A DNA stretch of 64,000 bases from Obrimoposthia wandeli (taxonomy: Eukaryota): positions 1 to 64,000 of the forward strand of contig CDROCS010000564.1 of NCBI GenBank assembly GCA_977020255.1. Reading direction: 5' to 3'. This document shows positions 20,399 to 46,094 of this stretch, piece by piece. The translations under genes were made by a program, and so were the position numbers. The notes below the pieces were generated by a model that saw nothing but the letters and a program-made list of their open reading frames with translations, did not search any database and had not been told where the DNA came from. How positions within the stretch are numbered: the first letter of the stretch is position 1; each line of letters opens with the position of its first letter.

Positions 20399-21332
20399 CA
20401 TAGATATAATAAACAAACCTAACTAATTTCACTTTTTAATTAACTCTTGCTCAGATATATGTCTATTCCATATAATCACATCTCTCTTATTTTCTGACAT
20501 ATGTTATGAAAGTTTCTATATGTACAAAATTGAATCTAAATTTCTATTGAACAAAATCGAATCATAAATATTTCCTGAACAAAATCGAATCTAAATTTCT
20601 CCATAAGATCCACGATGGGGATAAAATCAAAAAATCAAACTGCTCTACTGTCGCTGCATATATTTTTAATCGGCAACTGATAATATGAAATTGTGTTACG
20701 ATTAACAGTATTGTTAGGTTTAGGAATTGATAAAAATAAAATAATTAATCGAAATTATAGTGAAATAAGAATCCTTGAAAGCAAGGTTATAAATTAAATA
20801 AAATTGAATATTAGAATTAAATTATTAAAATTAAAAGGTAAATTGAATATTAAGGACCACGAAGGTCGTGTGTAGTGCGCTGTATGTATGGGAGGTTAAA
20901 TTATTATTAAGGGCCCCAAAAAAACAAGAATCAATTAAGGAAAACAAAAATCTAATTAAGAAGATTATTGCAAAAAGTTTATTAAGAAAAAGGACGAATA
21001 AGAAAATCAAATTAGTCGTACATTAGAAACCCATTAGCAGTCTGGGATCTACGACAACAGAAACCCATTAGCAGTCTGGGAGCTACGACAACAGAAACCC
21101 ATTAGCAGTGTCTGAGAGAGCACTTAACGGGATCGGGACCTCTGAACAGCAAGCAGCAAGTAGACTGCGGAATTGAGTCACGGAGGAACAAACAGGAAGT
21201 CCATTAGCGTCTGGACAGCGACTGTCTAGGAAACCGGAGGTAAAGTGGATTTGAGATTATCCATTATTTACTCTTGTAGAATCTCGGCAGCAAACAAAAA
21301 GCTTTTATAAAAGCGTGGCAATACACTACGGG

Positions 21333-21370
21333 TATAAATAAGACCCACGATAGGACCAGAGTTGTCAGTT
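21333..21370 (+). promoter_or_regulatory. Putative LTR core promoter: TATA box (TATAAATA 21333-21340) and initiator (TCAGTT 21365-21370)
   Basis: Consensus TATA about 30-34 nt upstream of a TCAGTT Inr, identical in the 3' LTR. The solo LTR has TATATAAG at 9529 in an equivalent position. Confidence 0.55.
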
Positions 21371-21535
21371 CTAACGAAAAGTGCAGCCAGATAATTCAGA
21401 GTTCTAACGAAAAGTGCAGCCAGATAATTCAGATTTTAACGAAAAGTGGAGCCAGATAATTCAGAGTTCTAACGAAAAGTGCAGCCAGATAATTCAGATT
21501 TCTAACGAAAAGTACAGCCAGATAATTCAGATTTC
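21371..21535 (+). repeat. 32-33 bp tandem repeat, 5 copies (6 copies in the 3' LTR, 44476-44672)
   Basis: Unit ctaacgaaaagtgcagccagataattcagag/ttt. A separate ~33-bp repeat (agaaacccattagcagtctggga.ctacgacaac, about 3 copies) lies at ~21026-21108. Confidence 0.9.
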
Positions 21536-21682
21536 ACAACATTCGGAATCGAAAAACGCCGTATTGACAAGTCAACCTACGGAAAACCGAGCAGCCCTCC
21601 GAACTGGAATCTGCCAACAACTGACATCCGAGGAAACATATCGAGGACGGATCAGCAGCACACGAGGCCAGCATACGTACTA

Positions 21683-21714
21683 TTGGTGAGAGTCAGAGGA
21701 AACTATTGGTAAAG
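21683..21714 (+). promoter_or_regulatory. Putative 5' splice donors in the LTR (TTG/GTGAGA at 21686, TTG/GTAAAG at 21709) immediately before the satellite
   Basis: Consensus GT-R-AG donors. The solo LTR has GAG/GTAAGG at 10011, right before its own repeat block. Confidence 0.45.
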
Positions 21715-24665
21715 TATTTTGAAAATATAAAAGTATTGATTGAAATAAAAGTCGTAAATATATTTTGAAAGTGTAAAAGCATTGATACATTGTGAAATAA
21801 AGTCGTAAAGTATTTTTGTATGTGTAAAAGCATTGATATATTGTGAAATAAAAGTCGTAAAGTATTTTGAAAATATAAAAGTATTGATTGAAATAAAAGT
21901 CGTAAAGTATTTTTGAAAATGTAAAAGCATTGATATATTGTGAAATAAAGTCGTAAAGTATTTTTGAAAGTGTAAAAGCATTGACATATTGTGAAATAAA
22001 AGTCGAAAAGTATTTTGAAGATATAAAAGTATTGATTGAAATAAAAGTCGTAAAGTATTTTGAAGATATAAAAGTACTGATTTAAATAAAAGTCGTAAAG
22101 TATTTTGAAAATATAAAAGTATTGATTGAAATAAAAGTCGTAAAGTATTTTGAAAATATAAAAGCATTGATACATTGTGAAATAAAGTCGTAAAGTATTT
22201 TTGAAAGTGTAAAAGCATTGATATATTGTAAAATAAAAGTCGTAAAGTATTTTGAAAATATAAAAGCATTGATACATTGTGAAATAAAGTCGTAAAGTAT
22301 TTTTGAAAGTGTAAAAGCATTGATATATTGTGAAATAAAAGTCGTAAAGTATTTTGAAAATATAAAAGTATTGATTGAAATAAAAGTCGTAAAGTATTTT
22401 GAAGATATAAAAGCATTGATACATTGTGAAATAAAGTCGTAAAGTATTTTTGAAAGTGTAAAAGCATTGATATATTGTGAAATAAAAGTCGTAAAGTATT
22501 TTGAAGATATAAAAGTATTGATTGAAATAAAAGTAGTAAAGTATTTTGAAGATATAAAAGTATTGATTGAAATAAAAGTCGTAAAGTATTTTGTAAGATA
22601 TAAAATCATTGATATATTGTGAAATAAAAGTCGTAAAGTATTTTGAAGTTATAAAAGTATTGATTGAAATAAAAGTAGTAAAGTATTTTAAAGATATAAA
22701 AGCATTGATATATTGTGAAATAAAGTCGTAAAGTATTTTTGAAAGTGTAAAAGCATTGATATATTGTGAAATAAAGTCGTAAAGTATTTTTGAATGTGTA
22801 AAAGCATTGATATATTGTGAAATAAAAGTGGTAAAGTATTTTGAAGATATAAAAGTATTGATTGAAATAAAAGTCGTAAAGTATTTTGAAGATATAAAAG
22901 CATTGATACATTGTGAAATAAAGTCGTAAAGTATTTTTGAAAGTGTAAAAGCATTGATATATTGTGAAATAAAAGTCGTAAAGTATTTTGAAGATATAAA
23001 AGTATTGATTGAAATAAAAGTCGTAAAGTATTTTGAAGATATAAAAGTATTGATTGAAATAAAAGTCGTAAAGTATTTTGAAGGTATAAAAGTATTAATA
23101 TATTGTGAAATAAAGTCGTAAAGTATTTTTGAATGTGTAAAAGCATTGATATATTGTGAAATAAAAGTCGTAAAGTATTTTGAAAATATAAAAGTATTGA
23201 TTGAAATAAAAGTCGTAAAGTATTTTTGAAAATGTAAAAGCATTGATATATTGTGAAATAAAGTCGTAAAGTATTTTTGAAAGTGTAAAAGCATTGACAT
23301 ATTGTGAAATAAAAGTCGAAAAGTATTTTGAAGATATAAAAGTATTGATTGAAATAAAAGTCGTAAAGTATTTTGAAGATATAAAAGTACTGATTTAAAT
23401 AAAAGTCGTAAAGTATTTTGAAGGTATAAAAGTATTAATATATTGTGAAATAAAGTCGTAAAGTAATTTTGAAAGTGTAAAAGCATTGATATATTGTGAA
23501 ATAAAAGTCGTAAAGTATTTTGAAAATATAAAAGCATTGATACATTGTGAAATAAAGTCGTAAAGTATTTTTGAAAGTGTAAAAGCATTGATATATTGTG
23601 AAATAAAAGTCGTAAAGTATTTTGAAAATATAAAAGTATTGATTGAAATAAAAGTCGTAAAGTATTTTGAAAATATAAAAGCATTGATACATTGTGAAAT
23701 AAAGTCGTAAAGTATTTTTGAAAGTGTAAAAGCATTGATATATTGTGAAATAAAAGTCGTAAAGTATTTTGAAAATATAAAAGTATTGATTGAAATAAAA
23801 GTCGTAAAGTATTTTGAAGATATAAAAGCATTGATACATTGTGAAATAAAGTCGTAAAGTATTTTTGAAAGTGTAAAAGCATTGATATATTGTGAAATAA
23901 AAGTCGTAAAGTATTTTGAAGATATAAAAGTATTGATTGAAATAAAAGTAGTAAAGTATTTTGAAGATATAAAAGTATTGATTGAAATAAAAGTCGTAAA
24001 GTATTTTGTAAGATATAAAATCATTGATATATTGTGAAATAAAAGTCGTAAAGTATTTTGAAGTTATAAAAGTATTGATTGAAATAAAAGTAGTAAAGTA
24101 TTTTAAAGATATAAAAGCATTGATACATTGTGAAATAAAGTCGTAAAGTATTTTTGAAAGTGTAAAAGCATTGATATATTGTGAAATAAAGTCGTAAAGT
24201 ATTTTTGAAAGTGTAAAAGCATTGATATATTGTGAAATAAAAGTGGTAAAGTATTTTGAAGATATAAAAGTATTGATTGAAATAAAAGTCGTAAAGTATT
24301 TTGAAGATATAAAAGCATTGATACATTGTGAAATAAAGTCGTAAAGTATTTTTGAAAGTGTAAAAGCATTGATATATTGTGAAATAAAAGTGGTAAAGTA
24401 TTTTGAAGATATAAAAGTATTGATTGAAATAAAAGTCGTAAAGTATTTTGAAGATATAAAAGCATTGATACATTGTGAAATAAAGTCGTAAAGTATTTTT
24501 GAAAGTGTAAAAGCATTGATATATTGTGAAATAAAAGTCGTAAAGTATTTTGAAGATATAAAAGTATTGATTGAAATAAAAGTCGTAAAGTATTTTGAAG
24601 GTATAAAAGTATTAATATATTGTGAAATAAAGTCGTAAAGTAATTTTGAAGGTATAAAAGCATTG
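21700..24665 (+). repeat. ~3.0-kb satellite of 44-52 bp units inside the 5' LTR (only ~0.75 kb in the 3' LTR, 44835-45570)
   Basis: Units aaagtcgtaaagtattttgaa..tataaaagtattgattgaaat and aaagtcgtaaagtatttttgaaagtgtaaaagcattgatatattgtgaaat. Rare variants recur at ~1.3-1.4 kb spacing, indicating a higher-order duplication. Confidence 0.97.
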
Positions 24666-25365
24666 ATTACAACTGAATTTATTGATTAAAGTAATTGAAA
24701 CGAATTAAAATTATTGATTAAAGTAATTGAAACGAATTGAAATTATTGATTAAAGTAATTGAAATGAATTGAATTTATTGAAAGAAAGTAATTTGGAAGA
24801 AAACTAAATTTTCATATATTGACTAAAGGACATTTGAAGTAAAGTATATAATTTTGAAATTTGAAATAAATTACGATTTGGGAGTTTAAATAAAATACAA
24901 TTTAACCTATACATTTAACCGTGTCACATTAGAGTAAAGACTCTAAGAATCACCCAACCCTAACCTTAAAATCGATACGTGGTTCATCCCCACTTGTGTA
25001 GAGACTTACAGAAGTCTTAGGAATTTTACTACAACTTTTTAGAAAATACGTACGTAAACGTATTGTTTTGTTTTAGTCTAGTGTGTTAACAATAAACGAT
25101 TTCCTACATTAGAAAGCATTGTTCTAGACCCTTCAGATTAAGAGACATCGAAAAACAAACACCTTCAGATAAGCATTGAGATAGGCAACTATAACATTAA
25201 GTAGGCCACAACCATCGTTAAGTCCTGCTTCTATAAGAACTCACGTTGAGGCCCTCCGCATTCAAGAGGATCTATAAGTTTCATATAGAAACCCCAACAT
25301 ATTAAATTGATACGCCCGAGTGAGGATAGCTCGTCGGACACAGCGACTTCACATAGAATAATAGA

Positions 25366-25550
25366 GCAAATTGAGAATAAGTTTCAGAAGAAGAAAATAT
25401 AAGCAAATTGAGAATAAGTTTCAGAAGAAGAAAATATAAGCAAATTGAGAATAAGTTTCAGAAGAAGAAAATATAAGCAAATTGAGAATAAGTTTCAGAA
25501 GAAGAAGATATAAGCAAATTGAGAATAAGTTTCAGAAGAAGAAGATATAA
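25366..25550 (+). repeat. 37-bp tandem repeat, 5 copies, in the 5' leader
   Basis: gcaaattgagaataagtttcagaagaagaa(a/g)atataa starting at 25366, 25403, 25440, 25477 and 25514. Confidence 0.95.
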
Positions 25551-25997
25551 GTAAATTGAGATAAGTAAACTGATAAGTTTTGAGAAATCGAGTAGATTTG
25601 TTCCTCGAATTAAGTAAATTTGATAAGTTTTGAGAATCGAGTGGATTGTTCCTCGAGGTAATTAATTGAATAGGTTAAGTCGAGAGACATGTCCTCGAAC
25701 TAATTAAATTGATATAAGAAATCTTAAAATAAGAATTATGAAATAAGATAAAGTAATAAGTAAATTGATATCGTAAACGAATACATAATTGATAAGACAA
25801 CGAATAATAAAAACGGACCCGCGTTTAATACTAGAAGACAAAGTCAGATTCCCCAGGAAGAGATAAATAATAATAAATTTAACCGAATTGAGCAGGTTCC
25901 CCAAACAGATAACAAAGTAATAGAAGAGACTAGAATCGAAGAAAACGTATCAGAAAGAGACGTTGATCAATCAGCAGTTTCAACCGACAGTTTTAAT

Positions 25998-28067
25998 TTG
26001 ACTGAATTATTTGGTGACATAAACCCAGAAGAATTTGAAATTGCCAATCCAGTAGCGGTTGAGGAAATTCAAGGGATTAATATTGAAGAAATAGTTGAGG
26101 AGGATATAGCTGAAAATATGGCTCACGCAGGAGCTCCAGCAGATAATAATGCAGGAAATAATGTAGGTGACATGAATGCAGAACAATTGGCACTAGCCTT
26201 AAATGCGACGTTGAGACCCAACTTTTCGGGATCATTGCAGATTACAAAGTTTAAAGGAGATGAGGAAAGTATTTGTGACTTCCTCGCAGAATATTCGAGT
26301 TGTGCAGATGTTCAAGGATGGAACGATAGAGAAAAATGTGTCCGTGTACAGGCACATTTAACCAGATTAGCACTTGAAGTGTATAAACATTTGACAGAAG
26401 CAGAACGTTTAGATTGGGCAACGTTGGAAAATGCTTTTATTGGAAAATTGGTATTGGGAGATTTAGCAAAAGTGAATAAGCGAATCATGAGAGAACGGAA
26501 ACAGAAACATGACGAAGGCGTGAATGAATACGCGTATGTTTTGAGAACCTTAGCCGCAAGAGCGTACCCAAGAAGAATAATGAAAAATCAGGACGGTAAC
26601 CCTGTAGCTCCAGAAGCACAAGTAGCGGAAAATGACCGGAACCAAAATGAAATGGCAGAAGTTTTGTTAGACATATTTAGAGGAGGACTGAAAAAAGACA
26701 TTAAAGTGTTATTAGCAGTATCAGACACGAATGATTTTGATAACGCCATACGAAAGGCGAGAGAGATTGAGAAAAATATAAAATATAACGCAGCAATGGC
26801 AATTTATGCAATGACCACAGGTGATGACGATAAGACAAAAGTATTCGTGAATAAAACAGAACCGAGTAATTTTCAGAATCGAAATTATGGACAAAATAAG
26901 TTTGAAAAAGTAGATGAATCCAGTAACGGAAACAGAGATAATTTCCGAAATAGGAATCGAGATGATTCGAGAGGTAGAAATAATAGTGAGTCTTGGAACA
27001 GGAATCGAGATGATTCAAGAGATAGAAATAGTAATGATTCGTGGAATAGAAATAGAGATGATTCCAGAAATAGATTTAGTAGAGATAATTCAGGAAATCG
27101 CCAACCTTGGAGAGGGGACGATAGGAATTACAACGCAAACAGAGGAGAGCGAAATGACTCTCGATTTGGAAATAATGCAGGAAATAGTGATGGAAGATTC
27201 AATAATCGAGGAAGCGGTTTTGAATCGAATTTCCGAAGAAATGATTTTAGAGGACGCTATGACAATAGACAGAATAGTCGTCGAGTACAGTTCGAAGATG
27301 AACAAAATAAGATAGATATTCGAGGGAGAATAATGTGTTACACGTGTAAACAAATGGGTCACTATTCGAGAGATTGTACGAGAAGTAAAGAGTTCGGAAC
27401 TAACAGATTTGGAAATAATAATTTCAGTAATAATAATTTTGGAAATAATTATAGAGGATATAATTCACCCCCGCCATGGAATAGAGGTGGTGGATATACT
27501 CCGCAGCAATGGAGACCGAATAATCAGTATACAGATAGACAACAGTCACCAGGTAGATACAATAACTATGCAGACAGACAGCAAGGAGCTGAGATATACA
27601 ATAATTACGTAGGACAGCAAGGAGCTGAGAGATATAATAATTCCGGTAGATATAATAATAATAATGTTAACAAGACAAATAGTCGTGAGAGTTCGCCGAA
27701 ACCGAAAGGAAATTTTAGTTACGTAAACGATGACAGCGATAGGAATCGCGAGACCGAGCTTCGACGCGAAATAGATTTTGAAGATAGTGATAGTAAATTT
27801 GAACGAATGTTGGGAATAATTAAAGATTCCCCACACACAAAGATGGCGAATTCATCTACGTTGTTGAAACACGAAAAAGGTCTACACTCGAGAGAAGAGA
27901 TGAATGATTTAATGAACCGAATACTAGAAGCGTATGAGACACCAATAGAAAAAACGTGTAACGCACAACCTATGACTGATCACATAGAAGCAGCAAGAAA
28001 TGCTACGAGTAGGGAAAATGTGAAAAAGATAATTAGTGAAGCTAAGGAGACGTTGAATCAACCGTAA
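25998..28067 (+). CDS. gag: Gag (retrotransposon capsid domain, R/N/D-rich disordered region, CCHC zinc knuckle)
   Basis: Capsid-type segment FKGDEESICDFL..Y...GWNDREK..RERKQKHDEGVNEYAYVLRTLA..IFRGGL and knuckle CYTCKQMGHYSRDC. First ATG at 26118, but the frame is open from 25764. The frame continues ~60 codons past the TAA at 28065. Confidence 0.93.
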   Translation: MTELFGDINPEEFEIANPVAVEEIQGINIEEIVEEDIAENMAHAGAPADNNAGNNVGDMNAEQLALALNATLRPNFSGSLQITKFKGDEESICDFLAEYSSCADVQGWNDREKCVRVQAHLTRLALEVYKHLTEAERLDWATLENAFIGKLVLGDLAKVNKRIMRERKQKHDEGVNEYAYVLRTLAARAYPRRIMKNQDGNPVAPEAQVAENDRNQNEMAEVLLDIFRGGLKKDIKVLLAVSDTNDFDNAIRKAREIEKNIKYNAAMAIYAMTTGDDDKTKVFVNKTEPSNFQNRNYGQNKFEKVDESSNGNRDNFRNRNRDDSRGRNNSESWNRNRDDSRDRNSNDSWNRNRDDSRNRFSRDNSGNRQPWRGDDRNYNANRGERNDSRFGNNAGNSDGRFNNRGSGFESNFRRNDFRGRYDNRQNSRRVQFEDEQNKIDIRGRIMCYTCKQMGHYSRDCTRSKEFGTNRFGNNNFSNNNFGNNYRGYNSPPPWNRGGGYTPQQWRPNNQYTDRQQSPGRYNNYADRQQGAEIYNNYVGQQGAERYNNSGRYNNNNVNKTNSRESSPKPKGNFSYVNDDSDRNRETELRREIDFEDSDSKFERMLGIIKDSPHTKMANSSTLLKHEKGLHSREEMNDLMNRILEAYETPIEKTCNAQPMTDHIEAARNATSRENVKKIISEAKETLNQP

Positions 28068-28243
28068 GATGAAACGAGTGAAGCTCCAGAAGTTTTGGCC
28101 AAATTGCAAACAATTAAAGTGCACAGATTGGAAGAAGTGCGAGCAGAATTGGTTAAACATAGTCATGATAACTTGGGTTACAAAGAAGTATCACGAGGAT
28201 TATTGAAAGTCTTTACGTGCAGAGATCAAACCAAAAAGGAACA

Positions 28244-28466
28244 ATGAAAATTTCTCTTCGATTAATTTCCGGACAGATAATACATGAAAAACTTAACGTG
28301 TATCAAACAATGAAAACTATTCGAAAAAAGTTGGCCGAGAAACTTGAAATTGATGGAATGAATATGTTGTTCCATTATAAAGGAAGATCACTAGATGATG
28401 AAGACGTACCAGTCGAGTGTGGATATCCGATAGGAAACGAATTAGAGGAAAAAATTGATGTCATCA
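28244..28466 (+). CDS. Ubiquitin/SUMO-like (beta-grasp) domain within the polyprotein (ORF 28217-29950)
   Basis: MKISLRLISGQIIHEKLNVYQTMKTIRKKLAEKLEIDGMNMLFHYKGRSLDDEDVPVECGY..IDVI; the LFHYKGRSLDDEDVP.E.G segment resembles SUMO [20 protein letters not shown]. An AT-hook RRGPGRPRK follows at 28973-28999. Confidence 0.6.
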
Positions 28467-29149
28467 CTGTAGGACGTCAGGAGTTAGTAGAAAATGAAGG
28501 ATTAACTGAGATATTAAACTCGGCGTTAGAAATGATAAAAACGCCTATAGAAATTTTAGACAGTTCAAGCGAAAGCGGAGATAATGATGTAGCTGAAGCT
28601 TGGAACAAGACATCCACACCAGAACCGTACGTAGCTGAATTACAAGACGTGGAACTAGAAAATGAGTTGATGACTCCGGTGGTCGAAGTACCACCAGAAC
28701 CAGAGATAATTCAAACCGGACAAGATGAAGTCACGGATATAGCCAACCAAGTGAGACAAAACGAAAACGTAACCCAACTAGTAGAAGACGAAATCTCCGA
28801 GATTGTAGATTTGGATTCACCAATTTGGCATGCTGCATACAGAGATAGACAAGCAGAGCAGATGATGCGACAAAACGAAGAGATTGGCCATGAAGAAGGA
28901 CCAAGTCAAGAGATACAGTATAATGGTGAACCGTATGATCCAGGAGAGAATCAAACTGAGTATCAGTATTTTCGAAGAGGACCTGGAAGACCTAGAAAGG
29001 ATGGAAGTATATTACGAAATGTTCTAACTGCACCACAAACTGATGAGGAGAGACATCTAAGCATTGGACAGCTAGCAGCGTCATTGGAGCAGTATAGTAC
29101 GGAGCGAAATGAAGATATCAGAGGTGATATGAATTCGGAAGCTCCAAGT

Positions 29150-29542: not shown

Positions 29543-29644
29543 ACCATTGTGGAAATGAACGAAGACGATGACGAACAATGTCATGAGAATCGTCAAAGAG
29601 AAAATAAACAATACCGTCCGAAAGAAAGAAACAATCAACCAAAT

Positions 29645-32949: not shown

Positions 32950-33033
32950 CACTATCCAAACAAAGGAAGTGGACAGACAGAGTTTAATAATTCGATAAAT
33001 ACAATATACCATATGGGAAATATAAATGGAGCA

Positions 33034-35177: not shown

Positions 35178-35182
35178 CGATT

Positions 35183-36430: not shown

Positions 36431-36539
36431 AATAAAGATAACGCGTCACGATATGAGTTAAAATCACAGAAATTGAAGCCGAATACCAATACCATTAAAC
36501 TGACACGAATGGTAAGTGATCGGAACTACATAAATATGA

Positions 36540-37960: not shown

Positions 37961-38368
37961 TTAGAAAGACTAAAACTTGAAGAGTCAGAATTAATGCCAC
38001 CAATGAGTGAGATCATTCCAGGTAAGTTATACCTCGGAAATGTGGAAGATGCAACAGACGAAAAGAAACTGTTGGAACAAGGGATAACATACGTGATCAA
38101 CGTTACAATGAATCACAAATCACAATATCAGACGATCAGAGCTATGACATTAAGAGTAAAAAAGAGATTAGAAAGACTAAAATTTGAAGAGTCAGAATTA
38201 ATGCCACCAATGAGTGAGATCATTCCAGGTAAGTTATACCTCGGAAATGTGGAAGATGCAACAGACGAAAAGAAACTGTTGGAACAAGGGATAACATACG
38301 TGATCAACGTTACAATGAATCACAAATAACAATATCAGACGATCAGAGCTATGACATTAAGAGTAAAA
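37955..38368 (+). repeat. 207-bp in-frame tandem duplication of the phosphatase N-terminus
   Basis: ATGCCACC at 37994 and 38201; the second copy has TCA>TAA at 38327. Confidence 0.95.
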
Positions 38369-38625
38369 GACTCAATGGAAGCTAATCTTCTCGAATGGTT
38401 CGTAGAAACAAACGAGATACTTCACAGAGAACTCCAAAACCAAGGAAAAGTGTTGGTACATTGTCAGAAAGGAATCTCCCAATCAGCAACCCTAGTATTA
38501 GCGTATCTAATAAAGACTAGACGAATGCAGGTACTAGAAGCACTGAAATACCTACAGGAAAGAAGAAGTATTGCGAACCCAAACCTTAATTTTTTGGGGC
38601 AATTGTCAAATTACCAACTCCTGTT
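38210..38625 (+). CDS. Dual-specificity (MAP kinase-type) phosphatase domain, P-loop Arg replaced by Gln
   Basis: MSEIIPGKLYLGN..GITYVINVT..GKVLVHCQKGISQSATLVLAYL..AL..LQERRSIANPNLNFLGQL. The consensus is HCxxGxSRS; CAA at 38480. Confidence 0.92.
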
Positions 38626-38728
38626 GCAAGAACAGAGACGGATGGACGACATCCCTGAGGATCCAAAGGAAAAGAATTTCCTCCAAGCACTATCGTTGAC
38701 CGGTTTATTCTTAGCCGGAGTCGACAAA

Positions 38729-39147
38729 ATTACTCAGATAATGCCGAAAGTATTTTTATGTCATCCAGGAGATATAGATACCGCTGGATTAAAGTTCAAC
38801 AGTATCAACCGAGTAATTAACATTGTTGAAGTCGAAAATGAGATAATCAGTCTGTGTCAAAATACTGAAGATGACACAACTCGATACATACATGCTTCCA
38901 ATCGGGAGATAAACGATGCACAACAACACCTGATGAAGTTGACTCAAACCATCCAAGCCGAAGTTACAGAAGGAAACGGCGTTCTGATATATCAGAAAAA
39001 AGGTACAATGTTAGCTCCTACCATAGGTGTATCCTTGTTGGTAGAGTACCATGGTCATACACCAGAAGAAGCGATGGTTTATATCAAACAGAATAGACCA
39101 GATACGGAATTCAAACCGTTACTCGTTCGAGAAATAGAGAAATACTC
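38729..39147 (+). CDS. Second, catalytically dead DUSP-like domain
   Basis: ITQIMPKVFL..INRVINI..GNGVLIYQKKGTMLAPTIGVSLLVEYHG.TPEEAM.YIKQNRP keeps the DUSP layout but lacks HC...R. Confidence 0.65.
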
Positions 39148-39199
39148 CGAAAAGAGGAAGCAACAACGAGAAACAAATGAAGCTACAACAACAGAGCCC

Positions 39200-41881
39200 A
39201 GCTATCAATACCAAAGATTGCTAGCACTAGGCTTGTTAAGTTGTCTAATGCCTATAACGGGAGCACAAGAGATAGGCTCCAACCACGGAAATAGTTCATG
39301 GTTCAAAGAAATCAACAACTACATCATACAGTACAATACACCGGCACTGATGATGCTATTAGTGTTGATAGGACTAATTGATGTATGGTTTATCCGAAAA
39401 TGTATCCGATCTATGAGAACCGATAGTAAAATATTTCAGTTTGTGAAAATGAAGAGACCAAATGAACCAACGAACCAAGTACTTGTGTATCTAGACGAAA
39501 GGATTGAGGATAACATAGTGAATGAAGCGATATTTTATCCACAAAACAGATTACTGAATCAATTCCGAATGGACTACGAAGCTGACCGACAGCGCACACT
39601 TGACCGAATATCAGCAACGTTCGCCGGATGCAAGCGAAGAAGGCGAATTGTGAGGGAAATACAAAAAGATGCGGATACAAAAGGTCCGACGTATATATTC
39701 GACGGCGATGTCATCAAAACACGTGAGTATGGAAGTAAGAGAGTGATAATTGAAACGATGGAAGGACATAAAATATGCTTGTCCGCCAAAAATGGATTCG
39801 GAAAGTTGATGATACAAGGTAAACAGGTACAGTTGATTATCGGAAAAACTGGAATCAAAGAAATGTCAAAGCAACGACAGACAACCAAACGACCTAACCA
39901 GAAACAGATGTCTCTCAAACGAATGATAATCAAAATCCTTTGCAAAAGGACAATCAAGGCCCTGTGCACTGTTGCACAAGGATTGATCTACGGAGTAGTA
40001 ATTGGATTGGTACTACAAGCCATTCCAACCAGTAAAGCTGAATTGATGACGCTACCTGGATATAATTTACATTTGAGAAATCTAGACAACACCCTAGAAA
40101 TAATCAATACGTCTCAAAGTAAAGCCGTAATGGTCATGTGTGTGAAAGGATGTCCAGGACGAATGTGTATAGTCCCAGCGACCGAAATGAAAACACTTAA
40201 TGGACATTATGGAGTTAGTGTTGTCACATGTGAAGATTACACATTTGGACAAACTAAAATAGTACTTCTCAGTGACATGTCCAATCAAAGTGTACATAAA
40301 TTTAAAATATTAACCATCAAGAGTAAAGGGATACCAGCAATACGTTATGGTATTCTAGAATTGGTTAATCCAATACTGGCATTGATCATTGGATTTATAA
40401 TATTAATATTACTCATCTTGTTTTGTTGTACAAAGATAGAGTTGAGATCAAAAAAGAAACGTCATGATCTCGCAAGACAAGCAGGTCAAATGAATTTACA
40501 AAAATTCAACACAAGTATACCAAGACCAGCATTCCTAAATGAACCAGCACGAGAGTACCAGCCAACGATATATGAACATATCGAGGAAAGACCGTACTAT
40601 ATGAGTAACTTGAGTTATTCCAGAGAAGTTCCTGAGATTCGGAATCGGACGATCATCGGAATCATGCTGATCATGCAAATCACCACGACCGAGGCTGGTT
40701 ATGAGATCATGATCAGTAAATGGAGACAAGATACGATACGGGCGTTATCCATAAAAATACCTCTAATAAAAACAAATTACGTAATATACATTCACCTACA
40801 AACATCAGCAACCGAAAATGTCGATCAGAAATTGTATGTCATTCGCCAGATCAAAATAAAGATTGACCAACATAAACTTTATTACCGACTGATATTATTC
40901 TACCATGAAAAGGTATTATACCTACGAATAACAATATCAAAAATGAAACGGATTATTCAATTTATCCAAACAAAGTCATTAATATTACCTAACGACGAGC
41001 GCATCTGGAAAGTTGTCGACAGGATTATGATCACAGGTAGACGACGTAAAACCGTATGGAATTCCGTTAGATTATTCTTCAGATTGTTAGAAACTGACAA
41101 AGTAACAGTGTCGTGTCCCAATCCAGATAGTGGAATCAGATTCGAAATTCAAAACCAAATGTTAGTACCACATTTTGATACAGAACGTCTATGTAACCGA
41201 ATTCCCAGCAATGCTAGAGAGACCTCTACCAAAATCATGGTAATAACAGGTGAAATATTCTACATAACTCTAAGATACCAGACACGTCGATTTCGTGGAC
41301 TCGGTATAAGTATCAAACCAAGGAAAATCATTCCTGGAAAACCAATCATAGTCATAAAAAAGGAAAAGGTGAAAGGAAGTAAACGCCATTCCGAGAAGCC
41401 AAAAGTAATCATAACAAAGACAGAGGTGAAAGGAAAAGAGTTCGAGCCCAGAAATCAAAGCACAATTATTGAGAAGACAAGAGTGAAGGGAACGATTCCA
41501 CTAGATCCCAAATATCATCTCAAATCCCAAATAATAATACCTGTTAGACCAAAAACAAAATATCCAAATCTGCGAGTTATTAGAAAATCGGACATAATAC
41601 ATGGAAACCGATCAACACCAATGGAAACGTCATTCAAACCGACAAACAACAAAATGAAGTATGATTATCAATCATCAGACAGCGGAATAACAGCGGTCAA
41701 TGCTCTAATTGGAATGGCAGTAGTGTCAACAGCAGTGGTTCTATTGACAGTCGTGTGCGTGAAAGGCAGTCAAGTATGCCCAAGAATACGACGAAAATGC
41801 GAAGGACTGCGATGCTGTAACACACCCACAATGGAGGAAGTGGAATTGCGACCCTTACCTCCGCCTCCCATCAAGACATGA
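39200..41881 (+). CDS. C-terminal polyprotein region encoding several putative type-I membrane proteins separated by internal signal peptides
   Basis: Alternating signal-like segments (39215-39265 ending ITGA/Q, 39962-40039 ending SKA/E, 40646-40696 ending TEA/G) and TM segments (39341-39394, 40364-40426, 41684-41761). Ends RPLPPPPIKT*. Confidence 0.6.
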   Translation, partial: SYQYQRLLALGLLSCLMPITGAQEIGSNHGNSSWFKEINNYIIQYNTPALMMLLVLIGLIDVWFIRKCIRSMRTDSKIFQFVKMKRPNEPTNQVLVYLDERIEDNIVNEAIFYPQNRLLNQFRMDYEADRQRTLDRISATFAGCKRRRRIVREIQKDADTKGPTYIFDGDVIKTREYGSKRVIIETMEGHKICLSAKNGFGKLMIQGKQVQLIIGKTGIKEMSKQRQTTKRPNQKQMSLKRMIIKILCKRTIKALCTVAQGLIYGVVIGLVLQAIPTSKAELMTLPGYNLHLRNLDNTLEIINTSQSKAVMVMCVKGCPGRMCIVPATEMKTLNGHYGVSVVTCEDYTFGQTKIVLLSDMSNQSVHKFKILTIKSKGIPAIRYGILELVNPILALIIGFIILILLILFCCTKIELRSKKKRHDLARQAGQMNLQKFNTSIPRPAFLNEPAREYQPTIYEHIEERPYYMSNLSYSREVPEIRNRTIIGIMLIMQITTTEAGYEIMISKWRQDTIRALSIKIPLIKTNYVIYIHLQTSATENVDQKLYVIRQIKIKIDQHKLYYRLILFYHEKVLYLRITISKMKRIIQFIQTKSLILPNDERIWKVVDRIMITGRRRKTVWNSVRLFFRLLETDKVTVSCPNPDSGIRFEIQNQMLVPHFDTERLCNRIPSNARETSTKIMVITGEIFYITLRYQTRRFRGLGISIKPRKIIPGKPIIVIKKEKVKGSKRHSEKPKVIITKTEVKGKEFEPRNQSTIIEKTRVKGTIPLDPKYHLKSQIIIPVRPKTKYPNLRVIRKSDIIHGNRSTPMETSFKPTNNKMKYDYQSSDSGITAVNALIGMAVVSTAVVLLTVVCVKGSQVCPRIRRKCEGLRCCNTPTMEEVELRPLPPPPIKT

Positions 41882-42006: not shown

Positions 42007-42306
42007 ATGTCCGAAGAATGCCCAATATGTTTGGAAGATTTAACCGAACGAAGAACAAGACCCGAAACCTGCAATCATTTACATCACGAGGAATGTTTAT
42101 CAAAATGGATCAGAACTTATGGAGAATTCGTACATCCAACATACCCTCGTTGCCCTGTATGCAGAAGACAATTCACAAAGTTCATCATAATAGAACCCAA
42201 CCAAGAGGATGTAGATGTACAAGTGGTATTCTGTTGGAAGAATTTGAGAGAATGTTGGTGTTACTACTGTCTGTCAGAACGACAAAATCCGACCACTTTT
42301 GTGTAA
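42007..42306 (+). CDS. Small RING-H2 protein 1 (putative E3 ligase) with C-terminal Cys cluster
   Basis: CPIC..CNHLHHEEC..W..CPVCR; C-terminal CWKNLRECWCYYCL. Confidence 0.88.
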   Translation: MSEECPICLEDLTERRTRPETCNHLHHEECLSKWIRTYGEFVHPTYPRCPVCRRQFTKFIIIEPNQEDVDVQVVFCWKNLRECWCYYCLSERQNPTTFV

Positions 42307-42366
42307 ACATCACACAACCACCAGTCTCCAATCGAGCCCAAATTCAACATCAACCCTCTCACAGTA

Positions 42367-42672
42367 ATGTCTGGAGAATGTTCAATCTGCTACGAGAACA
42401 TCGTGGACCTCTACACCAAACCCAACAACTGCGACCACCAGTTCCACGTCGAATGCCTCGAGACGTGGATCCCAATCGCCAACAACAACAATCCCCTCGA
42501 CTACTTAAACTGCCCGATGTGCAGAGCAACCTTCTCGGTGCACTATGTCTACAATCGGGACAGCCTCCAAGCAGTGGTACCCATTGTACACTGCTGAAAA
42601 AACATCTGCGACTGCTGGTGTTCGTTCTGCATGGAGGAGCGACGCACAGGCCAGCCCAATACCCAGCAGTAA
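42367..42672 (+). CDS. Small RING-H2 protein 2 (premature TGA at 42595; true end probably TAA 42670-42672)
   Basis: CSIC..CDHQFHVEC..W..CPMCR. Reading through the stop gives HC*KNICDCWCSFCMEERR, paralogous to RING1 FCWKNLRECWCYYCLSER, implying TGG>TGA. Confidence 0.88.
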
Positions 42673-43014
42673 TCGAAGGTAACTTTTGACTTAAAACGTG
42701 ACATCATGAACTACCCCTGTGTATCGCATACCGCGATAAATTAGTTACCATAATTGTAATCATAATTGTATAATCTTGTGAAATTGTAAAATGACCGTTA
42801 CCATTTTTATGTATGTTGTTTATTTGAAATTGTAATTATTAAGACTGAAACTCATAGAGACAATTTTTTTATACTTAGTATGAATGTGAAAAAACATGCC
42901 TAAAATCAAGCAGAATTCGGTAGGATTAAAAATAACATTAAAATTAAAATATTAATTTCGTAAATTAATATTAAACCCAATCGAACCCCAAATTAAAGAG
43001 TAATTATTGCGCAG

Positions 43015-43545
43015 ATGCTTTGTGCAATTTGCCTCGAGAAAATCTGGGCAGCGTCAGCATCCCCTGTCGGGTGCCGACACAAATTCCACGAGTCCTGCCT
43101 CTATTCGTGGGCCAAGGCTCGACCCCCCGGCCACATCACATGCCCGATGTGCCGGGCACCCTTTTGCAAGTGGACGCTCCAGTGCCGTGGACGATCCAAG
43201 GGCACCCGCTCACCCACCAGCTGCATTGGTGGCGAGCACTGTCAGTGCTCCATGTGCCTCGCGCGCCGTCGCAACACACAATTTGGCATCCGCGAGCGAT
43301 GGCGGTCTAGCTGCGATAACCGCTCGTGGCAACAGGCCAGACGCTTATGGATGGAGAACCATGAGCTGAACGGGCAGAACTTCGACCTATTTATCGAAAG
43401 CCCACACATGACCCTGAGCCAGTAGCTACTCCTATACAACGGGGACATTCCGTCCTTTCCAGACCTACCCCTGGAGCAGGTCACACTCTATCTGGACAAT
43501 CGAAACCAACAAACCGTGACAATAGACCTTACCATCAACAATTGA
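43015..43545 (+). CDS. RING-H2 protein 3 (probable premature TAG at 43423; frame stays open to TGA 43543-43545)
   Basis: CAIC..CRHKFHESC..W..CPMCR; CIGGEHCQCSMCLARR; the extension ends QTVTIDLTINN*. Confidence 0.82.
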
Positions 43546-43816
43546 CAAAACATAAACTCCATTCATCCGTTCCTGATCCTTTTCCTTTATCTGTAAAGCC
43601 ATTTTTGTGTATAATAAATTAGTGAATATTTGAGACTTTGTTCAAATTATTCGCTATTTTAACATCTAAAAAACCGAATTTTGTTAAACTTTAGGTATGT
43701 TGATGAGTACTGAATGCTTGAATTAGTAGGGATGAACTTAAAATCAGTAGCCCAGAGGCTAGTAAAGTAAAATCGTTACGTTCCGGGGACGTAACCTTTT
43801 TAGAACCCCCGAGATA

Positions 43817-46094
43817 TGTTAGGTTTAGGAATTGATAAAAATAAAATAATTAATCGAAATTATAGTGAAATAAGAATCCTTGAAAGCAAGGTTATAAATT
43901 AAATAAAATTGAATATTAGAATTAAATTATTAAAATTAAAAGGTAAATTGAATATTAAGGACCACGAAGGTCGTGTGTAGTGCGCTGTATGTATGGGAGG
44001 TTAAATTATTATTAAGGGCCCCAAAAAAACAAGAATCAATTAAGAAAAACGAAAATCTAATTAAGAAGATTATTGCAAAAAGTTTATTAAGAAAAATGAC
44101 GAATAAGAAAATCAAATTAGTCGTACATTAGAAACCCATTAGCAGTCTGGGATCTACGACAACAGAAACCCATTAGCAGTCTGGGAGCTACGACAACAGA
44201 AACCCATTAGCAGTGTCTGAGAGAGCACTTAACGGGATCGGGACCTCTGAACAGCAAGCAGCAAGTAGACTGCGGAATTGAGTCACGGAGGAACAAACAG
44301 GAAGTCCATTAGCGTCTGGACAGCGACTGTCTAGGAAACCGGAGGTAAAGTGGATTTGAGATTATCCATTATTTACTCTTGTAGAATCTCGGCAGCAAAC
44401 AAAAAGCTTTTATAAAAGCGTGGCAATACACTACGGGTATAAATAAGACCCGCGATAGGACCAGAGTTGTCAGTTCTAACGAAAAGTGCAGCCAGATAAT
44501 TCAGATTTTAACGAAAAGTGGAGCCAGATAATTCAGAGTTCTAACGAAAAGTGCAGCCAGATAATTCAGATTTTAACGAAAAGTGGAGCCAGATAATTCA
44601 GAGTTCTAACGAAAAGTGCAGCCAGATAATTCAGATTTCTAACGAAAAGTGCAGCCAGATAATTCAGATTTCACAACATTCGGAATCGAAAAACGCCGTA
44701 TTGACAAGTCAACCTACGGAAAACCGAGCAGCCCTCCGAACTGGAATCTGCCAACAACTGACATCCGAGGAAACATATCGAGGACGGATCAGCAGCACAC
44801 GAGGCCAGCATACGTACTATTGGTGAGAGTCAGAGGAAACTATTGGTAAAGTATTTTGAAAATATAAAAGTATTGATTGAAATAAAAGTCGTAAATATAT
44901 TTTGAAAGTGTAAAAGCACTGATACATTGTGAAATAAAGTCGTAAAGTATTTTTGAAAGTGTAAAAGCATTAATATATTGTGAAATAAAGTCGTAAAGTA
45001 TTTTTGAATGTGTAAAAGCATTGATATATTGTGAAATAAAAGTCGTAAAGTATTTTGAAGATATAAAAGTATTGATTGAAATAAAAGTCGTAAAGTATTT
45101 TGAAGATATAAAAGCATTGATACATTGTGAAATAAAGTCGTAAAGTATTTTTGAAAGTGTAAAAGCATTAATATATTGTGAAATAAAGTCGTAAAGTATT
45201 TTTGAATGTGTAAAAGCATTGATATATTGTGAAATAAAAGTCGTAAAGTATTTTGAAGATATAAAAGTATTGATTGAAATAAAAGTCGTAAAGTATTTTG
45301 AAAATATAAAAGCATTGATACATTGTGAAATAAAGTCGTAAAGTATTTTTGAAAGTGTAAAAGCATTGATATATTGTGAAATAAAAGTCGTAAAGTATTT
45401 TGAAAATATAAAAGTATTGATTGAAATAAAAGTCGTAAAGTATTTTGAAAATATAAAAGCATTGATACATTGTGAAATAAAGTCGTAAAGTATTTTTGAA
45501 AGTGTAAAAGCATTGATATATTGTGAAATAAAAGTCGTAAAGTATTTTGAAAATATAAAAGTATTGATACATTGTGAAATAAAATGAAATAAAATTGATA
45601 CATTTTTCATATATTGACTAAAGGACATTTGAAGTAAAGTATATAATTTTGAAATTTGAAATAAATTACGATTTGGGAGTTGAAATAAAATACAATTTAA
45701 CCTATCCATTTAACCGTGTCACATTAGAGTAAAGACTCTAAGAATCACCCAACCCTAACCTTAAAATCGATACGTGGTTCATCCCCACTTGTGTAGAGAC
45801 TTACAGAAGTCTTAGGAATTTTACTACAACTTTTTAGAAAATACGTACGTAAACGTATTGTTTTGTTTTAGTCTAGTGTGTTAACAATAAACGATTTCCT
45901 ACATTAGAAAGCATTGTTCTAGACCCTTCAGATTAAGAGACATTGAAAAACAAACACCTTCAGATAAGCATTGAGATAGGCAACTATAACATTAAGTAGG
46001 CCACAACCATCGTTAAGTCCTGCTTCTATAAGAACTCACGTTGGGGCCCTCCGCATTCAAGAGGATCTATAAGTTTCACATAGAAACCCCAACA
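43817..46094 (+). repeat. 3' LTR (2278 bp)
   Basis: Direct repeat of the 5' LTR, TGTTAGG...CCCCAACA, followed by TSD GTAT. Confidence 0.95.

What the first reader, a model, noticed from the sequence alone, without database searches (positions are those of the whole stretch)
20712..46094. Giant env-bearing Gypsy retrotransposon carrying a virus-like host-manipulation arsenal in one polyprotein
Seen: a 25.4-kb element with LTRs and TSD whose ~15.8-kb coding region reads, across in-frame stops and single frameshifts, Gag - SUMO-like/AT-hook - Bcl-2-like - chuviral G - PR1 - IAP - PR2 - RT - RH - IN - ? - DUSP - pseudo-DUSP - membrane proteins, then three RING-H2 genes. Known: ordinary Gypsy elements are 5-10 kb with no such cargo, while large DNA viruses carry vBcl-2, IAPs, VH1-type DUSPs and RING E3s to block apoptosis and defence. 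Giant planarian Burro elements have been described, and some cargo such as an IAP may already be noted there. Inference: this family behaves like a complex, potentially infectious retrovirus-like agent that blocks cell death at two levels, dampens MAPK signalling and attacks SUMO/ubiquitin-dependent silencing.
Basis: partly seen in the sequence, partly recalled or inferred. Interest (0 to 1): 0.95.

Follow-up and report, generated by a model that had tools for sequence, protein, structure and literature searches.

The report
Dead Burro-like giant planarian retroelement
This is a real 25.4-kb copy, now broken, of a giant retrovirus-like element of the kind already described in planarian flatworms as Burro; it carries cell-death, ubiquitin and phosphatase genes taken from hosts, and only part of that cargo may be new.

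Summary
The element spans 20712-46094, with two LTRs (4.6 and 2.3 kb), TG..CA ends and a 4-bp target duplication. About 15.8 kb of one-strand coding reads Gag-CCHC, ubiquitin-like, AT-hook, a weak Bcl-2-like stretch, a Monjiviricetes-type fusion glycoprotein, PR1, BIR+RING, PR2, RT, RH, IN, DUSP, pseudo-DUSP and a membrane-rich tail. Three small RING-H2 genes follow.

Profile searches support every call except two: Bcl-2 (Pfam E 0.14) and SUMO (only weakly ubiquitin-like).

Burro elements of Schmidtea were already published with Gag, Ubi/SUMO-like, BCL2-like, BIR and env in frame between gag and pol, in one roughly 4,900-aa polyprotein. GAG-ENV-POL elements are also reported in Platyhelminthes.

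This copy is dead:
- seven frame changes and three in-frame stops;
- about 180 residues missing from the glycoprotein;
- a duplication inside DUSP1, and an incomplete phosphatase P-loop.

Two distant relatives share the Gag-G-PR backbone but not the cargo. What may be new is the tandem DUSP, the second protease flanking the IAP, the orphan membrane module and the RING-H2 trio. I could not test whether other copies carry them.

The parts
20712..46094 (+). Whole element, 25,383 bp, flanked by the 4-bp target-site duplication GTAT (20708-20711 and 46095-46098)
20712..25299 (+). 5' LTR (4,588 bp), TG..CA. It holds a 33/65-nt array and a 51-nt tandem array of about 60 copies (21709-24667)
25300..26117 (+). 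Leader, with a 37-nt tandem array (25365-25566). No canonical TGG primer-binding site directly after the LTR
26118..41881 (+). Giant gag-accessory-env-pol-accessory reading frame, taken from the first ATG of the open Gag frame. It is broken into 11 open pieces by 7 frame changes and 3 in-frame stops. The pieces sum to 5,181 residues
26229..27380 (+). Gag: capsid-like region (29% identity to the Gag part of relative L001, E 9e-20) and one CCHC zinc knuckle (27336-27380)
28235..28471 (+). Ubiquitin-like domain. Support is weak (Pfam ubiquitin E 1e-3, below cut-off; PDB ubiquitin variants E 0.012). No C-terminal di-glycine. SUMO versus ubiquitin is not resolved
   Evidence: structure model failed
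28973..29002 (+). AT-hook-like motif (GRP core in a basic context), seen by eye; the only GRP in the polyprotein
29009..29560 (+). Candidate Bcl-2-like helical region. Pfam Bcl-2 scores only E 0.14 and 13 bits, matching profile positions 35-100 at 29330-29518. It lies directly upstream of the hydrophobic signal of G
29645..31154 (+). Env-like fusion glycoprotein G (Pfam Monjiviricetes_fusion, E 2e-66), with an N-terminal signal-like segment and a C-terminal membrane anchor. Broken by one frame change and by an internal loss of about 170-190 residues relative to the Pfam profile and to L001
31407..31676 (+). Protease 1 (retropepsin, D-T-G present); 27% identical to protease 2
31980..32928 (+). 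IAP-like module: BIR (E 2e-14; PDB NAIP/DIAP1/ML-IAP), a second weak BIR-like stretch (E 0.015) and a C-terminal RING (C3HC4_3, E 1e-10). Broken by one frame change. One of the eight RING metal-ligand positions is not Cys or His in this copy
33034..33327 (+). Protease 2 (retropepsin, D-T-G present). This is the one that corresponds to the single protease of relatives P0154 and L001
33982..34458 (+). Reverse transcriptase (RVT_1, E 2e-37; Y-I-D-D present). No dUTPase between PR2 and RT
34680..35030 (+). RNase H (RT_RNaseH, E 6e-40)
35363..36421 (+). Integrase: H2C2 zinc domain, rve core and a weak C-terminal domain. Broken by one in-frame stop
36422..38026 (+). Region of unknown function between IN and DUSP, with an acidic Ser/Glu-rich linker. 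No family hit
38027..38617 (+). DUSP1 (DSPc, E 2e-31; best solved matches human DUSP10/4/1). The P-loop has the Cys but not the Arg. The gene carries a 207-nt tandem duplication of its N-terminal part and one in-frame stop
38753..39142 (+). Pseudo-DUSP: full-length DSPc match (E 9e-7, 29 bits) without the catalytic Cys or Arg
39203..41881 (+). Membrane-rich tail of about 890 residues, with four strong hydrophobic segments, 8 N-x-S/T sequons and 22 Cys in the whole piece. No relatives and no family hit
42007..42306 (+). RING-H2 ORF 1 (99 aa; zf-RING_2, E 2e-10)
42367..42597 (+). RING-H2 ORF 2 (76 aa; zf-RING_2, E 1e-9); GC3 0.75
43015..43425 (+). RING-H2 ORF 3 (136 aa; zf-RING_2, E 3e-8), in a 58-64% GC island; GC3 0.71
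43817..46094 (+). 3' LTR (2,278 bp), TG..CA, with about 14 copies of the 51-nt unit

Best explanation
This is one young but already dead insertion of a Burro-like giant Ty3/Gypsy element, of the Gag-Env-Pol type known from flatworms, in an AT-rich, planarian-like genome.

Shown:
- LTRs and a target-site duplication.
- The gene order Gag, accessory domains, G, PR1, IAP, PR2, RT, RH, IN, then DUSP, pseudo-DUSP, a membrane tail and three RING-H2 ORFs.
- All of it on one strand and, within the polyprotein, in one base composition.
- Relatives in which Gag+G (L001) or G+PR (P0154) are a single open frame.

Inferred:
- The intact ancestor was translated as one polyprotein of about 5,000 residues and cut by its own protease(s).
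- The chain was threaded through the ER membrane. The hydrophobic segment just after the Bcl-2-like region would act both as the signal for the G ectodomain and, once cut, as a tail anchor for the upstream domain. The G membrane anchor would bring the chain back to the cytosol for PR-IAP-PR-RT-RH-IN-DUSP.
- The cargo looks like intronless host coding sequence picked up during reverse transcription. It turns over between lineages: L001 has an Ig domain after IN and none of this cargo, and P0154 and L001 have no IAP or second protease.
- If the cargo is active in intact copies, its most likely role is to keep the expressing cell alive and blunt stress signalling. That role is not shown here.

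In this copy the genes are inactivated.
For: - Structure: LTR/TSD anatomy and the Pfam domain series.
- No internal termini. Uniform GC of 0.35-0.40 and GC3 of 0.22-0.39 across backbone and cargo, against 0.28-0.29 in the flanks.
- P0154 carries the G C-terminus and PR in one ORF. It is 41% identical to this G, and its PR matches PR2 (E 1e-20 over 202 aa) better than PR1 (E 1e-11).
- L001 carries Gag and G in one 1,082-aa ORF, followed by PR-RT, RH, IN and Ig. Its G is 34% identical (E 2e-80) and its PR-RT 45% identical.
- LTR divergence of 1.05% predicts about 85 substitutions and about 12 indels in 16 kb since insertion. That is the order of the 7 frame changes and 3 stops seen, so the copy was probably open or nearly open when it inserted.
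- Published Burro maps show the same order, Gag, Ubi/SUMO-like, BCL2-like, env, PR, in one ORF of 4,873 aa (PMC6431247). GAG-ENV-POL elements are reported in Platyhelminthes (PMC13524379).
Against: - No other copy of this family and no Burro reference sequence could be reached, so membership of a named Burro family is untested, as is the presence of DUSP, the RING-H2 genes and the second PR in other copies.
- Burro1 markers (MATH_TRAF_C, ankyrin, dUTPase) are absent.
- Bcl-2 and ubiquitin-like support is sub-threshold, and both structure models failed (pLDDT 42 and 43).
- Some frame changes could be long-read assembly errors or native ORF boundaries rather than decay.
- No canonical PBS or PPT was recognised.
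- The host species is not identified.
Confidence: 0.85

Rival explanations
1. One reading: intact copies of this family are a complex, possibly infectious retrovirus-like agent. Its cargo (Bcl-2-like, IAP, DUSP, RING E3s, Ub-like/AT-hook) would be kept by selection to block apoptosis, damp MAPK signalling and counter silencing.
For: - The insertion is young (LTRs 1.05% apart).
- A related solo LTR lies nearby, so the family has inserted repeatedly.
- The cargo has taken on the element's base composition, which suggests long residence.
- All eight RING-H2 metal ligands are kept in three paralogues only 32-34% identical.
- Both proteases keep D-T-G.
- BURRO1 is reported as highly abundant, expressed and controlled by SMEDWI-2 (PMC8532177).
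- The env homology led others to propose that these elements are proviruses (PMC6431247).
Against: - Nothing here measures selection or activity.
- DUSP1 lacks the P-loop Arg, DUSP2 lacks both Cys and Arg, and no rhodanese/MAPK-binding domain was found.
- G has lost about 180 residues.
- One RING ligand of the IAP is lost.
- The Bcl-2 call is not significant.
- The closest relatives do without this cargo.
- In PMC8532177, BURRO1 RNAi and reverse-transcriptase inhibitors did not improve the smedwi-2 RNAi phenotype.
Confidence: 0.35
2. The cargo is passenger material: host mRNA fragments picked up by template switching and carried along, already degenerating (pseudo-DUSP, incomplete P-loop), with no role for the element.
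For: - Pseudo-DUSP and the incomplete DUSP1 P-loop.
- An orphan membrane tail with no relatives among 1.84 billion representatives.
- Cargo differs completely between relatives.
Against: - About 7 kb of cargo stays open in long frames in AT-rich DNA. The longest open piece is 1,176 aa and covers DUSP, pseudo-DUSP and the tail.
- Composition is equilibrated with the backbone.
- The same cargo classes (Ub-like, BCL2, BIR) recur at the same positions in the published Burro families of two planarian genera (PMC6431247).
Confidence: 0.2
3. The cargo segments are copy-specific nested insertions, or the locus is a chimeric assembly.
For: - The 207-nt tandem duplication inside DUSP1 and the unequal LTR arrays show that local rearrangement or assembly trouble does occur here.
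- RING-H2 ORFs 2 and 3 have a foreign-looking composition.
Against: - No direct or inverted terminal repeats of 30 nt or more bracket any cargo segment.
- All cargo is on the coding strand, in frames that abut the backbone domains.
- Matching LTR ends and a perfect 4-bp duplication bracket the whole unit.
Confidence: 0.05

Closest known systems
Burro giant Gypsy-like LTR retrotransposons of Schmidtea mediterranea (Burro1 = GYPSM1; Burro-2, -3, -4) and the Burro-like element of Dugesia (Girardia) tigrina (Grohme 2018; Jurka 2007; Arkhipova and Yushenova 2019, PMC6431247)
   Same: - Giant LTR element in an AT-rich genome.
- One huge gag-to-pol frame.
- Gag with CCHC.
- Ub/SUMO-like, then BCL2-like, then a mononegavirus-type env in frame between gag and pol.
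- BIR domain.
- Tandem repeats in and near the LTRs.
- Extra accessory ORFs.
   Different: - No MATH_TRAF_C, ankyrin, dUTPase, Smc or midasin-like hits here.
- Only one CCHC knuckle was detected here (Burro1 has three, D. tigrina two).
- This element has two proteases flanking the IAP, a tandem DUSP/pseudo-DUSP, a membrane-rich tail and three RING-H2 ORFs. None of these appears in the published text I could read.
- It is 25.4 kb rather than over 30 kb.
- Sequence identity to the Burro references could not be measured.
GAG-ENV-POL errantivirus-like Ty3/gypsy elements of Nematoda, Bryozoa and Platyhelminthes with gB-type (class III) env (PMC13524379)
   Same: Env lies between gag and pol. The host phylum is consistent. 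The env is of the Monjiviricetes/chuvirus-like family, which that paper describes as structurally gB-like.
   Different: Those elements are ordinary in size and are described as separate ORFs without host-derived cargo. The class III fold of this G was not tested here.
Relatives found here: L001 (JGI metagenome 3300071567) and P0154 (ENA ERZ23498365)
   Same: Gag+G in one ORF (L001) and G+PR in one ORF (P0154). G is 34-41% identical and PR-RT 45% identical.
   Different: Neither has the Ub-like/AT-hook/Bcl-2-like block, the PR1-IAP block or a DUSP. L001 carries an Ig-domain cargo after IN, and its unit is about 12 kb.
Mosquito BEL/Pao elements that captured a chuvirus-like glycoprotein (Dezordi 2020, PMC7642597)
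   Same: An LTR retroelement that acquired a Jingchuvirales/Monjiviricetes-type glycoprotein as its env.
   Different: A different retroelement superfamily, with env as a separate downstream gene and no host-manipulation cargo.
Large DNA viruses with vBcl-2, IAP, VH1 DUSP and RING E3 genes
   Same: The same functional classes of cargo.
   Different: An analogy only. The DUSP here matches cellular MKP and tandem-DUSP proteins best, not a viral VH1. No viral protein came back as a named hit for any cargo domain.

Membership tests
Ty3/Gypsy (Metaviridae) LTR retrotransposon | Paired LTRs with TG..CA ends and a 4-6-bp target-site duplication | tested here: met
   LTRs about 99% identical outside the arrays; TSD GTAT
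Ty3/Gypsy (Metaviridae) LTR retrotransposon | Pol order PR-RT-RH-IN, and Gag with a CCHC knuckle | tested here: met
Ty3/Gypsy (Metaviridae) LTR retrotransposon | tRNA primer-binding site after the 5' LTR and a polypurine tract before the 3' LTR | tested here: inconclusive
   no TGG-type PBS, no clear purine run, and no tRNA in the window to compare
Burro (planarian giant Gypsy) | Env homologue in reading order between gag and pol within the giant frame | tested here: met
   Continuity is broken in this copy but open in relatives P0154 and L001
Burro (planarian giant Gypsy) | Ubi2/SUMO-like and BCL2-like motifs upstream of env | tested here: inconclusive
   Ubiquitin E 1e-3 and Bcl-2 E 0.14, both below cut-off but at the published positions. 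Models had pLDDT 42-43
Burro (planarian giant Gypsy) | BIR domain in the polyprotein | tested here: met
Burro (planarian giant Gypsy) | Burro1-type extras: MATH_TRAF_C, ankyrin repeats, dUTPase between PR and RT | tested here: not met
   no such hits. This argues against Burro1 itself, not against the wider family
Burro (planarian giant Gypsy) | Sequence identity to the Burro1-4 references; host in Dugesiidae | not testable with these tools
   No planarian genome or Repbase entry is reachable. No close protein relative in either protein library. The 28-29% GC of the flanks fits the more than 70% A/T reported for S. mediterranea (PMC11410931)
Monjiviricetes/chuvirus-type fusion glycoprotein | Match to the family profile, with a signal peptide and a C-terminal membrane anchor | tested here: met
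   PF24664 at 225 bits; hydrophobic segments. About 170-190 residues are missing in the middle. Assignment to Chuviridae specifically was not tested
IAP | BIR domain(s) plus a C-terminal RING | tested here: met
   One RING ligand position is not Cys or His, and there is one frame change inside the module
Dual-specificity phosphatase (active Cys-based PTP) | DSPc fold with a complete H-C-x5-R P-loop | tested here: not met
   The fold match is strong, but DUSP1 has Cys without Arg, and DUSP2 has neither
MAP kinase phosphatase (MKP) subfamily | N-terminal rhodanese-like MAPK-binding domain | tested here: not met
   No Rhodanese hit upstream, even at E up to 5
Poxvirus VH1-type DUSP | Closest relatives are viral VH1 proteins | tested here: not met
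   The best hits are cellular DUSP10/4/1 and tandem-DSPc proteins of rotifer, fish and shrimp
Bcl-2 family | Significant match to the Bcl-2 profile or fold | tested here: inconclusive
   PF00452 E 0.14; no PDB hit; the all-helical model has low confidence
RING-H2 E3 ligase | C3H2C3 metal-ligand pattern | tested here: met
   all eight ligands are invariant in the three ORFs

The most novel reading that the evidence does not exclude
This may be an undescribed Burro-like lineage with a larger accessory set than any published retroelement map: a tandem DUSP/pseudo-DUSP, an IAP bracketed by two proteases, an orphan module of several membrane proteins, and three separately encoded RING-H2 genes, two of them with a foreign GC-rich composition. 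That would make it a Ty3/Gypsy element organised like a 'complex' retrovirus, and the first retroelement reported to carry a dual-specificity phosphatase. Cargo would be swapped between sister lineages, as with the Ig domain in L001.
Probability: 0.35. Interest if true: 0.6.

Novelty: new member of a known kind. Interest (0 to 1): 0.4.

Why it matters
Burro-type elements make up a large share of planarian genomes and are expressed in differentiated tissues under PIWI control. A catalogue of what their different lineages carry would show how far an LTR retroelement can go in collecting host cell-death, ubiquitin and signalling genes. It would also show how an env gene can sit inside a gag-pol polyprotein. 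This single dead copy adds candidate cargo classes (DUSP, a second protease, a RING-H2 trio, membrane proteins) and two distant relatives that fix the shared backbone. The concept itself is already in the literature.

Tried and rejected
Searches that found little or nothing:
- A word-indexed search with the Ub-like/Bcl-2-like/G N-terminal piece found nothing.
- An exact look-up of the 1,176-aa product found nothing on record.
- The exhaustive representative search with the DUSP-to-tail piece found only DUSP domains. Nothing scored below 1e-30 and nothing matched the tail.
- The G piece matched nothing in the PDB by sequence.
- PHROGs gave nothing for the unknown region or the tail.
- tRNA and Rfam scans of the window were empty, so the PBS could not be checked.
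- Grohme 2018 is not held, so its Burro-2 to -4 domain maps could not be compared.

Models that failed:
- Single-sequence AlphaFold models of the Bcl-2-like and Ub-like regions came out at pLDDT 42 and 43. I therefore ran no fold search.

Calls that told nothing:
- The sigma-70 promoter/terminator scan is irrelevant to a eukaryotic element. It only pointed to a hairpin before the 3' LTR.
- Contigs L002, L003 and L004 are ordinary or unclear Gypsy elements and were not used further. L003 has Baculo_F env downstream of pol.

- Any consensus, joined-frame or stop-replaced sequence.
- Any scan of viral contigs with G, which could have fetched animal viruses.
- Fetching any viral comparator.

Slips, stated as required:
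- The script printed the sizes of the gaps or overlaps between neighbouring open pieces, without coordinates.

Full report

Yes. A direct-repeat scan and BLASTN show two long terminal repeats, 20712-25299 and 43817-46094. Both begin TGTTAGG and end CCAACA, and the 4-bp GTAT flanks the element on both sides.

Outside their internal arrays the LTRs differ by 14 substitutions in 1,332 aligned bases (1.05%) and two gap events. The 2.3-kb length difference is due to a 51-nt tandem array of about 60 copies in the 5' LTR and about 14 in the 3' LTR.

The element is 25,383 bp with an 18.5-kb interior. The window has no N runs.

**2. Coding content**

On the + strand, 11 open pieces totalling 5,181 residues run from the first ATG of the Gag frame (26118) to 41881. 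Pfam gives these domains in order:

| Domain | Pfam result | Note |
|---|---|---|
| CCHC knuckle | E 7e-6 | Gag |
| Ubiquitin-like | E 1e-3 | Below Pfam's cut-off; PDB ubiquitin variants E 0.012 |
| Bcl-2 | E 0.14, 13 bits | Not significant; matches profile positions 35-100 |
| Monjiviricetes_fusion glycoprotein | E 2e-66 | Plus E 5e-9 for its N-terminus |
| Retropepsin 1 | E 3e-6 | |
| BIR | E 2e-14 | PDB: NAIP, DIAP1, ML-IAP |
| RING of the IAP type | E 1e-10 | |
| Retropepsin 2 | E 1e-7 | |
| RVT_1 | E 2e-37 | |
| RT_RNaseH | E 6e-40 | |
| Integrase H2C2 and rve | E 5e-19 and 8e-12 | |
| DSPc | E 2e-31 | |
| Second DSPc | E 9e-7 | Full-length match |

Further points on the coding content:
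- A single AT-hook-like GRP core in a basic context lies between the Ub-like and Bcl-2-like regions.
- Both proteases keep D-T-G, and RT keeps Y-I-D-D.
- After the pseudo-DUSP come about 890 residues with four strong hydrophobic segments. They have no family hit.
- Downstream of the giant frame lie three small ATG-initiated ORFs. They are paralogous RING-H2 proteins, 32-34% identical, with all eight ligands invariant (zf-RING_2 E 2e-10 to 3e-8).

- 'SUMO-like' can only be called ubiquitin-like, and weakly.
- 'Bcl-2-like' is not significant by any test I could run. The PDB gave nothing, and the single-sequence model had pLDDT 42.
- 'VH1-type' DUSP is wrong as a relationship.

**3. State of this copy**

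The giant frame is interrupted by seven frame changes and three in-frame stops. By gene:

| Location | Damage |
|---|---|
| Gag/accessory boundary | One frame change |
| G | One frame change, and about 170-190 residues missing from the middle relative to the Pfam profile and to L001 |
| G/PR1 boundary | One stop |
| IAP | One frame change; one RING ligand position is not Cys or His |
| RT/RH boundary | One frame change |
| RH/IN boundary | One frame change |
| IN | One stop |
| IN/unknown-region boundary | One frame change |
| Unknown-region/DUSP1 boundary | One frame change |
| DUSP1 | One stop and a 207-nt tandem duplication of its N-terminal part |

DUSP1's P-loop has the Cys but not the Arg. 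DUSP2 has neither.

With LTRs 1.05% apart, neutral decay predicts roughly 85 substitutions and 12 indels in the 16-kb coding span since insertion. That is the order of what is seen. It is consistent with a frame that was open or nearly open at insertion, but it does not prove it. Some frame changes could instead be long-read assembly errors or native ORF boundaries.

**4. Are the cargo blocks nested insertions?**

No evidence points that way.
- The interior has no direct or inverted repeats of 30 nt or more that could be termini. The only repeats are short coding-level ones and the tandem duplication.
- All cargo is on the coding strand, in frames that abut the backbone domains.
- GC and GC3 of the cargo inside the polyprotein (0.35-0.40 and 0.24-0.39) match the backbone (0.35-0.40 and 0.22-0.38), not the host flanks (0.28-0.29).
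- The exception is RING-H2 ORFs 2 and 3, with GC3 of 0.75 and 0.71. The third sits in a 58-64% GC island. This is unexplained.

**5. Relatives**

Neither protein library holds a close relative. Two distant ones are informative.
- **P0154** (491 aa, ENA sample ERZ23498365) is 41% identical to the C-terminal part of G and continues in the same ORF into a retropepsin. That protease, with its downstream linker, aligns with PR2 over 202 residues (E 1e-20), but with PR1 over only 91 (E 1e-11).
- **L001** (a 13.8-kb JGI contig) is 45% identical in PR-RT. It has a Gag-like N-terminus and a complete G in one 1,082-aa ORF. Its Gag part is 29% identical to this Gag (E 9e-20) and its G is 34% identical (E 2e-80). 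PR-RT, RH and IN follow, then an Ig-domain protein. It has no Ub-like, Bcl-2-like, IAP or DUSP region.

So the backbone Gag-G-PR-RT-RH-IN, read through as one frame, is shared over deep divergence, while the cargo is lineage-specific. The PR1-IAP block looks like an addition between G and the ancestral protease. PR1 and PR2 are 27% identical.

The DUSP matches cellular proteins best:
- human DUSP10/4/1 catalytic domains in the PDB (E about 3e-17);
- in the exhaustive search, tandem-DSPc proteins of a rotifer, a fish, a shrimp and metagenomes, at 30-52% identity.

None of these hits carries RT or IN. The tandem arrangement may have been captured as a unit. No rhodanese-type MAPK-binding domain precedes it.

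**6. Comparison with the literature**

- Arkhipova and Yushenova (PMC6431247, section 7) summarise Burro elements of Schmidtea mediterranea (Grohme 2018; GYPSM1 of Jurka 2007) and a Burro-like element of Dugesia tigrina. They describe interiors up to 25 kb and an ORF1 of 4,873 or 5,140 aa. They report a typical Gag with CCHC knuckles, MATH_TRAF_C, Ubi2/SUMO-like, BCL2-like, dUTPase, BIR and ankyrin. They also report an env related to mononegavirus fusion glycoproteins 'in-frame between gag and pol'.
- The same authors already suggest integrated proviruses that meddle with apoptosis and ubiquitination.
- PMC13524379 reports GAG-ENV-POL Ty3/gypsy elements with gB-type env in Platyhelminthes, Nematoda and Bryozoa.
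- PMC8532177 shows BURRO1 to be abundant, tissue-specifically expressed and repressed by SMEDWI-2.
- PMC7642597 documents capture of a chuvirus-like glycoprotein by mosquito BEL/Pao elements.

In what I could read, a few features are not mentioned: a DUSP, a second protease, the membrane-rich tail and the RING-H2 trio. A full-text search for retrotransposon, polyprotein, dual specificity phosphatase and BIR together found no paper. Grohme 2018, with its maps of Burro-2 to -4, is not held, so prior description cannot be excluded.

This copy lacks the Burro1 markers MATH_TRAF_C, ankyrin and dUTPase. It is therefore not Burro1.

**7. How it most likely works (inference)**

- An LTR-driven genomic transcript is translated into one polyprotein that the element's protease(s) cut.
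- The hydrophobic stretch directly after the Bcl-2-like region would send the G ectodomain into the ER lumen. If cut there, it would leave the upstream domain with a C-terminal membrane anchor.
- The G anchor would return the chain to the cytosol for PR1-IAP-PR2-RT-RH-IN-DUSP. The tail would cross the membrane again.
- This would explain how an env can sit inside gag-pol.
- The cargo classes suggest that the element keeps the expressing cell alive and modifies ubiquitin and phosphorylation signalling. No activity is shown, and in this copy the DUSP motifs are incomplete.
- How the three RING-H2 ORFs would be expressed is unknown. Splicing was not examined.

**8. Surroundings**

- A 2,016-bp solo LTR of a related family lies at 8882-10897. 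It has TG..CA ends and its own 4-bp duplication, ATAC.
- The flanks hold other Gypsy debris. No tRNA or Rfam match was found, and no ORF in the flanks matched a non-transposon protein family.

**9. Limits and left-out steps**

Pieces were searched apart.
- No viral comparator was fetched, and the viral contig collection was not scanned with G.

**Verdict**

This is a real, well-read, dead copy of a known kind of element. The concept is already published. Part of the cargo list may be new.

Noticed in passing
window 8882-10897: Solo LTR (2,016 bp) of a related family. It has TG..CA ends and its own 4-bp target duplication, ATAC. Its ends are 75-86% identical to this element's LTR ends, and it holds different internal tandem arrays.
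   Followed up: partly
window 42367-42597 and 43015-43425: RING-H2 ORFs 2 and 3 have GC3 of 0.75 and 0.71, and the third lies in a 58-64% GC island. The rest of the element has GC3 of 0.22-0.39, and the host flanks are 28-29% GC. The origin of this composition is unexplained.
   Followed up: partly
window 21709-24667 versus 44846-45584: The 51-nt LTR array has about 60 copies in the 5' LTR and about 14 in the 3' LTR. Either it expanded or contracted after insertion, or the assembly collapsed it. Long minus-strand ORFs inside it (up to 729 aa) are stop-free only because of the repetition.
   Followed up: no
window 25300-25340 and 43775-43816: There is no TGG-type primer-binding site after the 5' LTR and no purine-rich tract before the 3' LTR. 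A 9-bp-stem hairpin (43775-43795) lies just upstream of the 3' LTR.
   Followed up: no
window 186-734 (-) and 13939-14421 (+): Decayed fragments of other Gypsy elements: a weak RNase H-like ORF and a weak integrase zinc-domain-like ORF.
   Followed up: no
L001:1-13818: This metagenome contig holds a Gag-G-PR-RT-RH-IN element with an immunoglobulin-domain protein after IN. IN and Ig occur at both contig ends, so it is a permuted or tandem assembly of a unit of about 12 kb.
   Followed up: partly
window 25365-25566: A 37-nt tandem repeat (5.5 copies, 98% matches) lies in the leader between the 5' LTR and gag.
   Followed up: no
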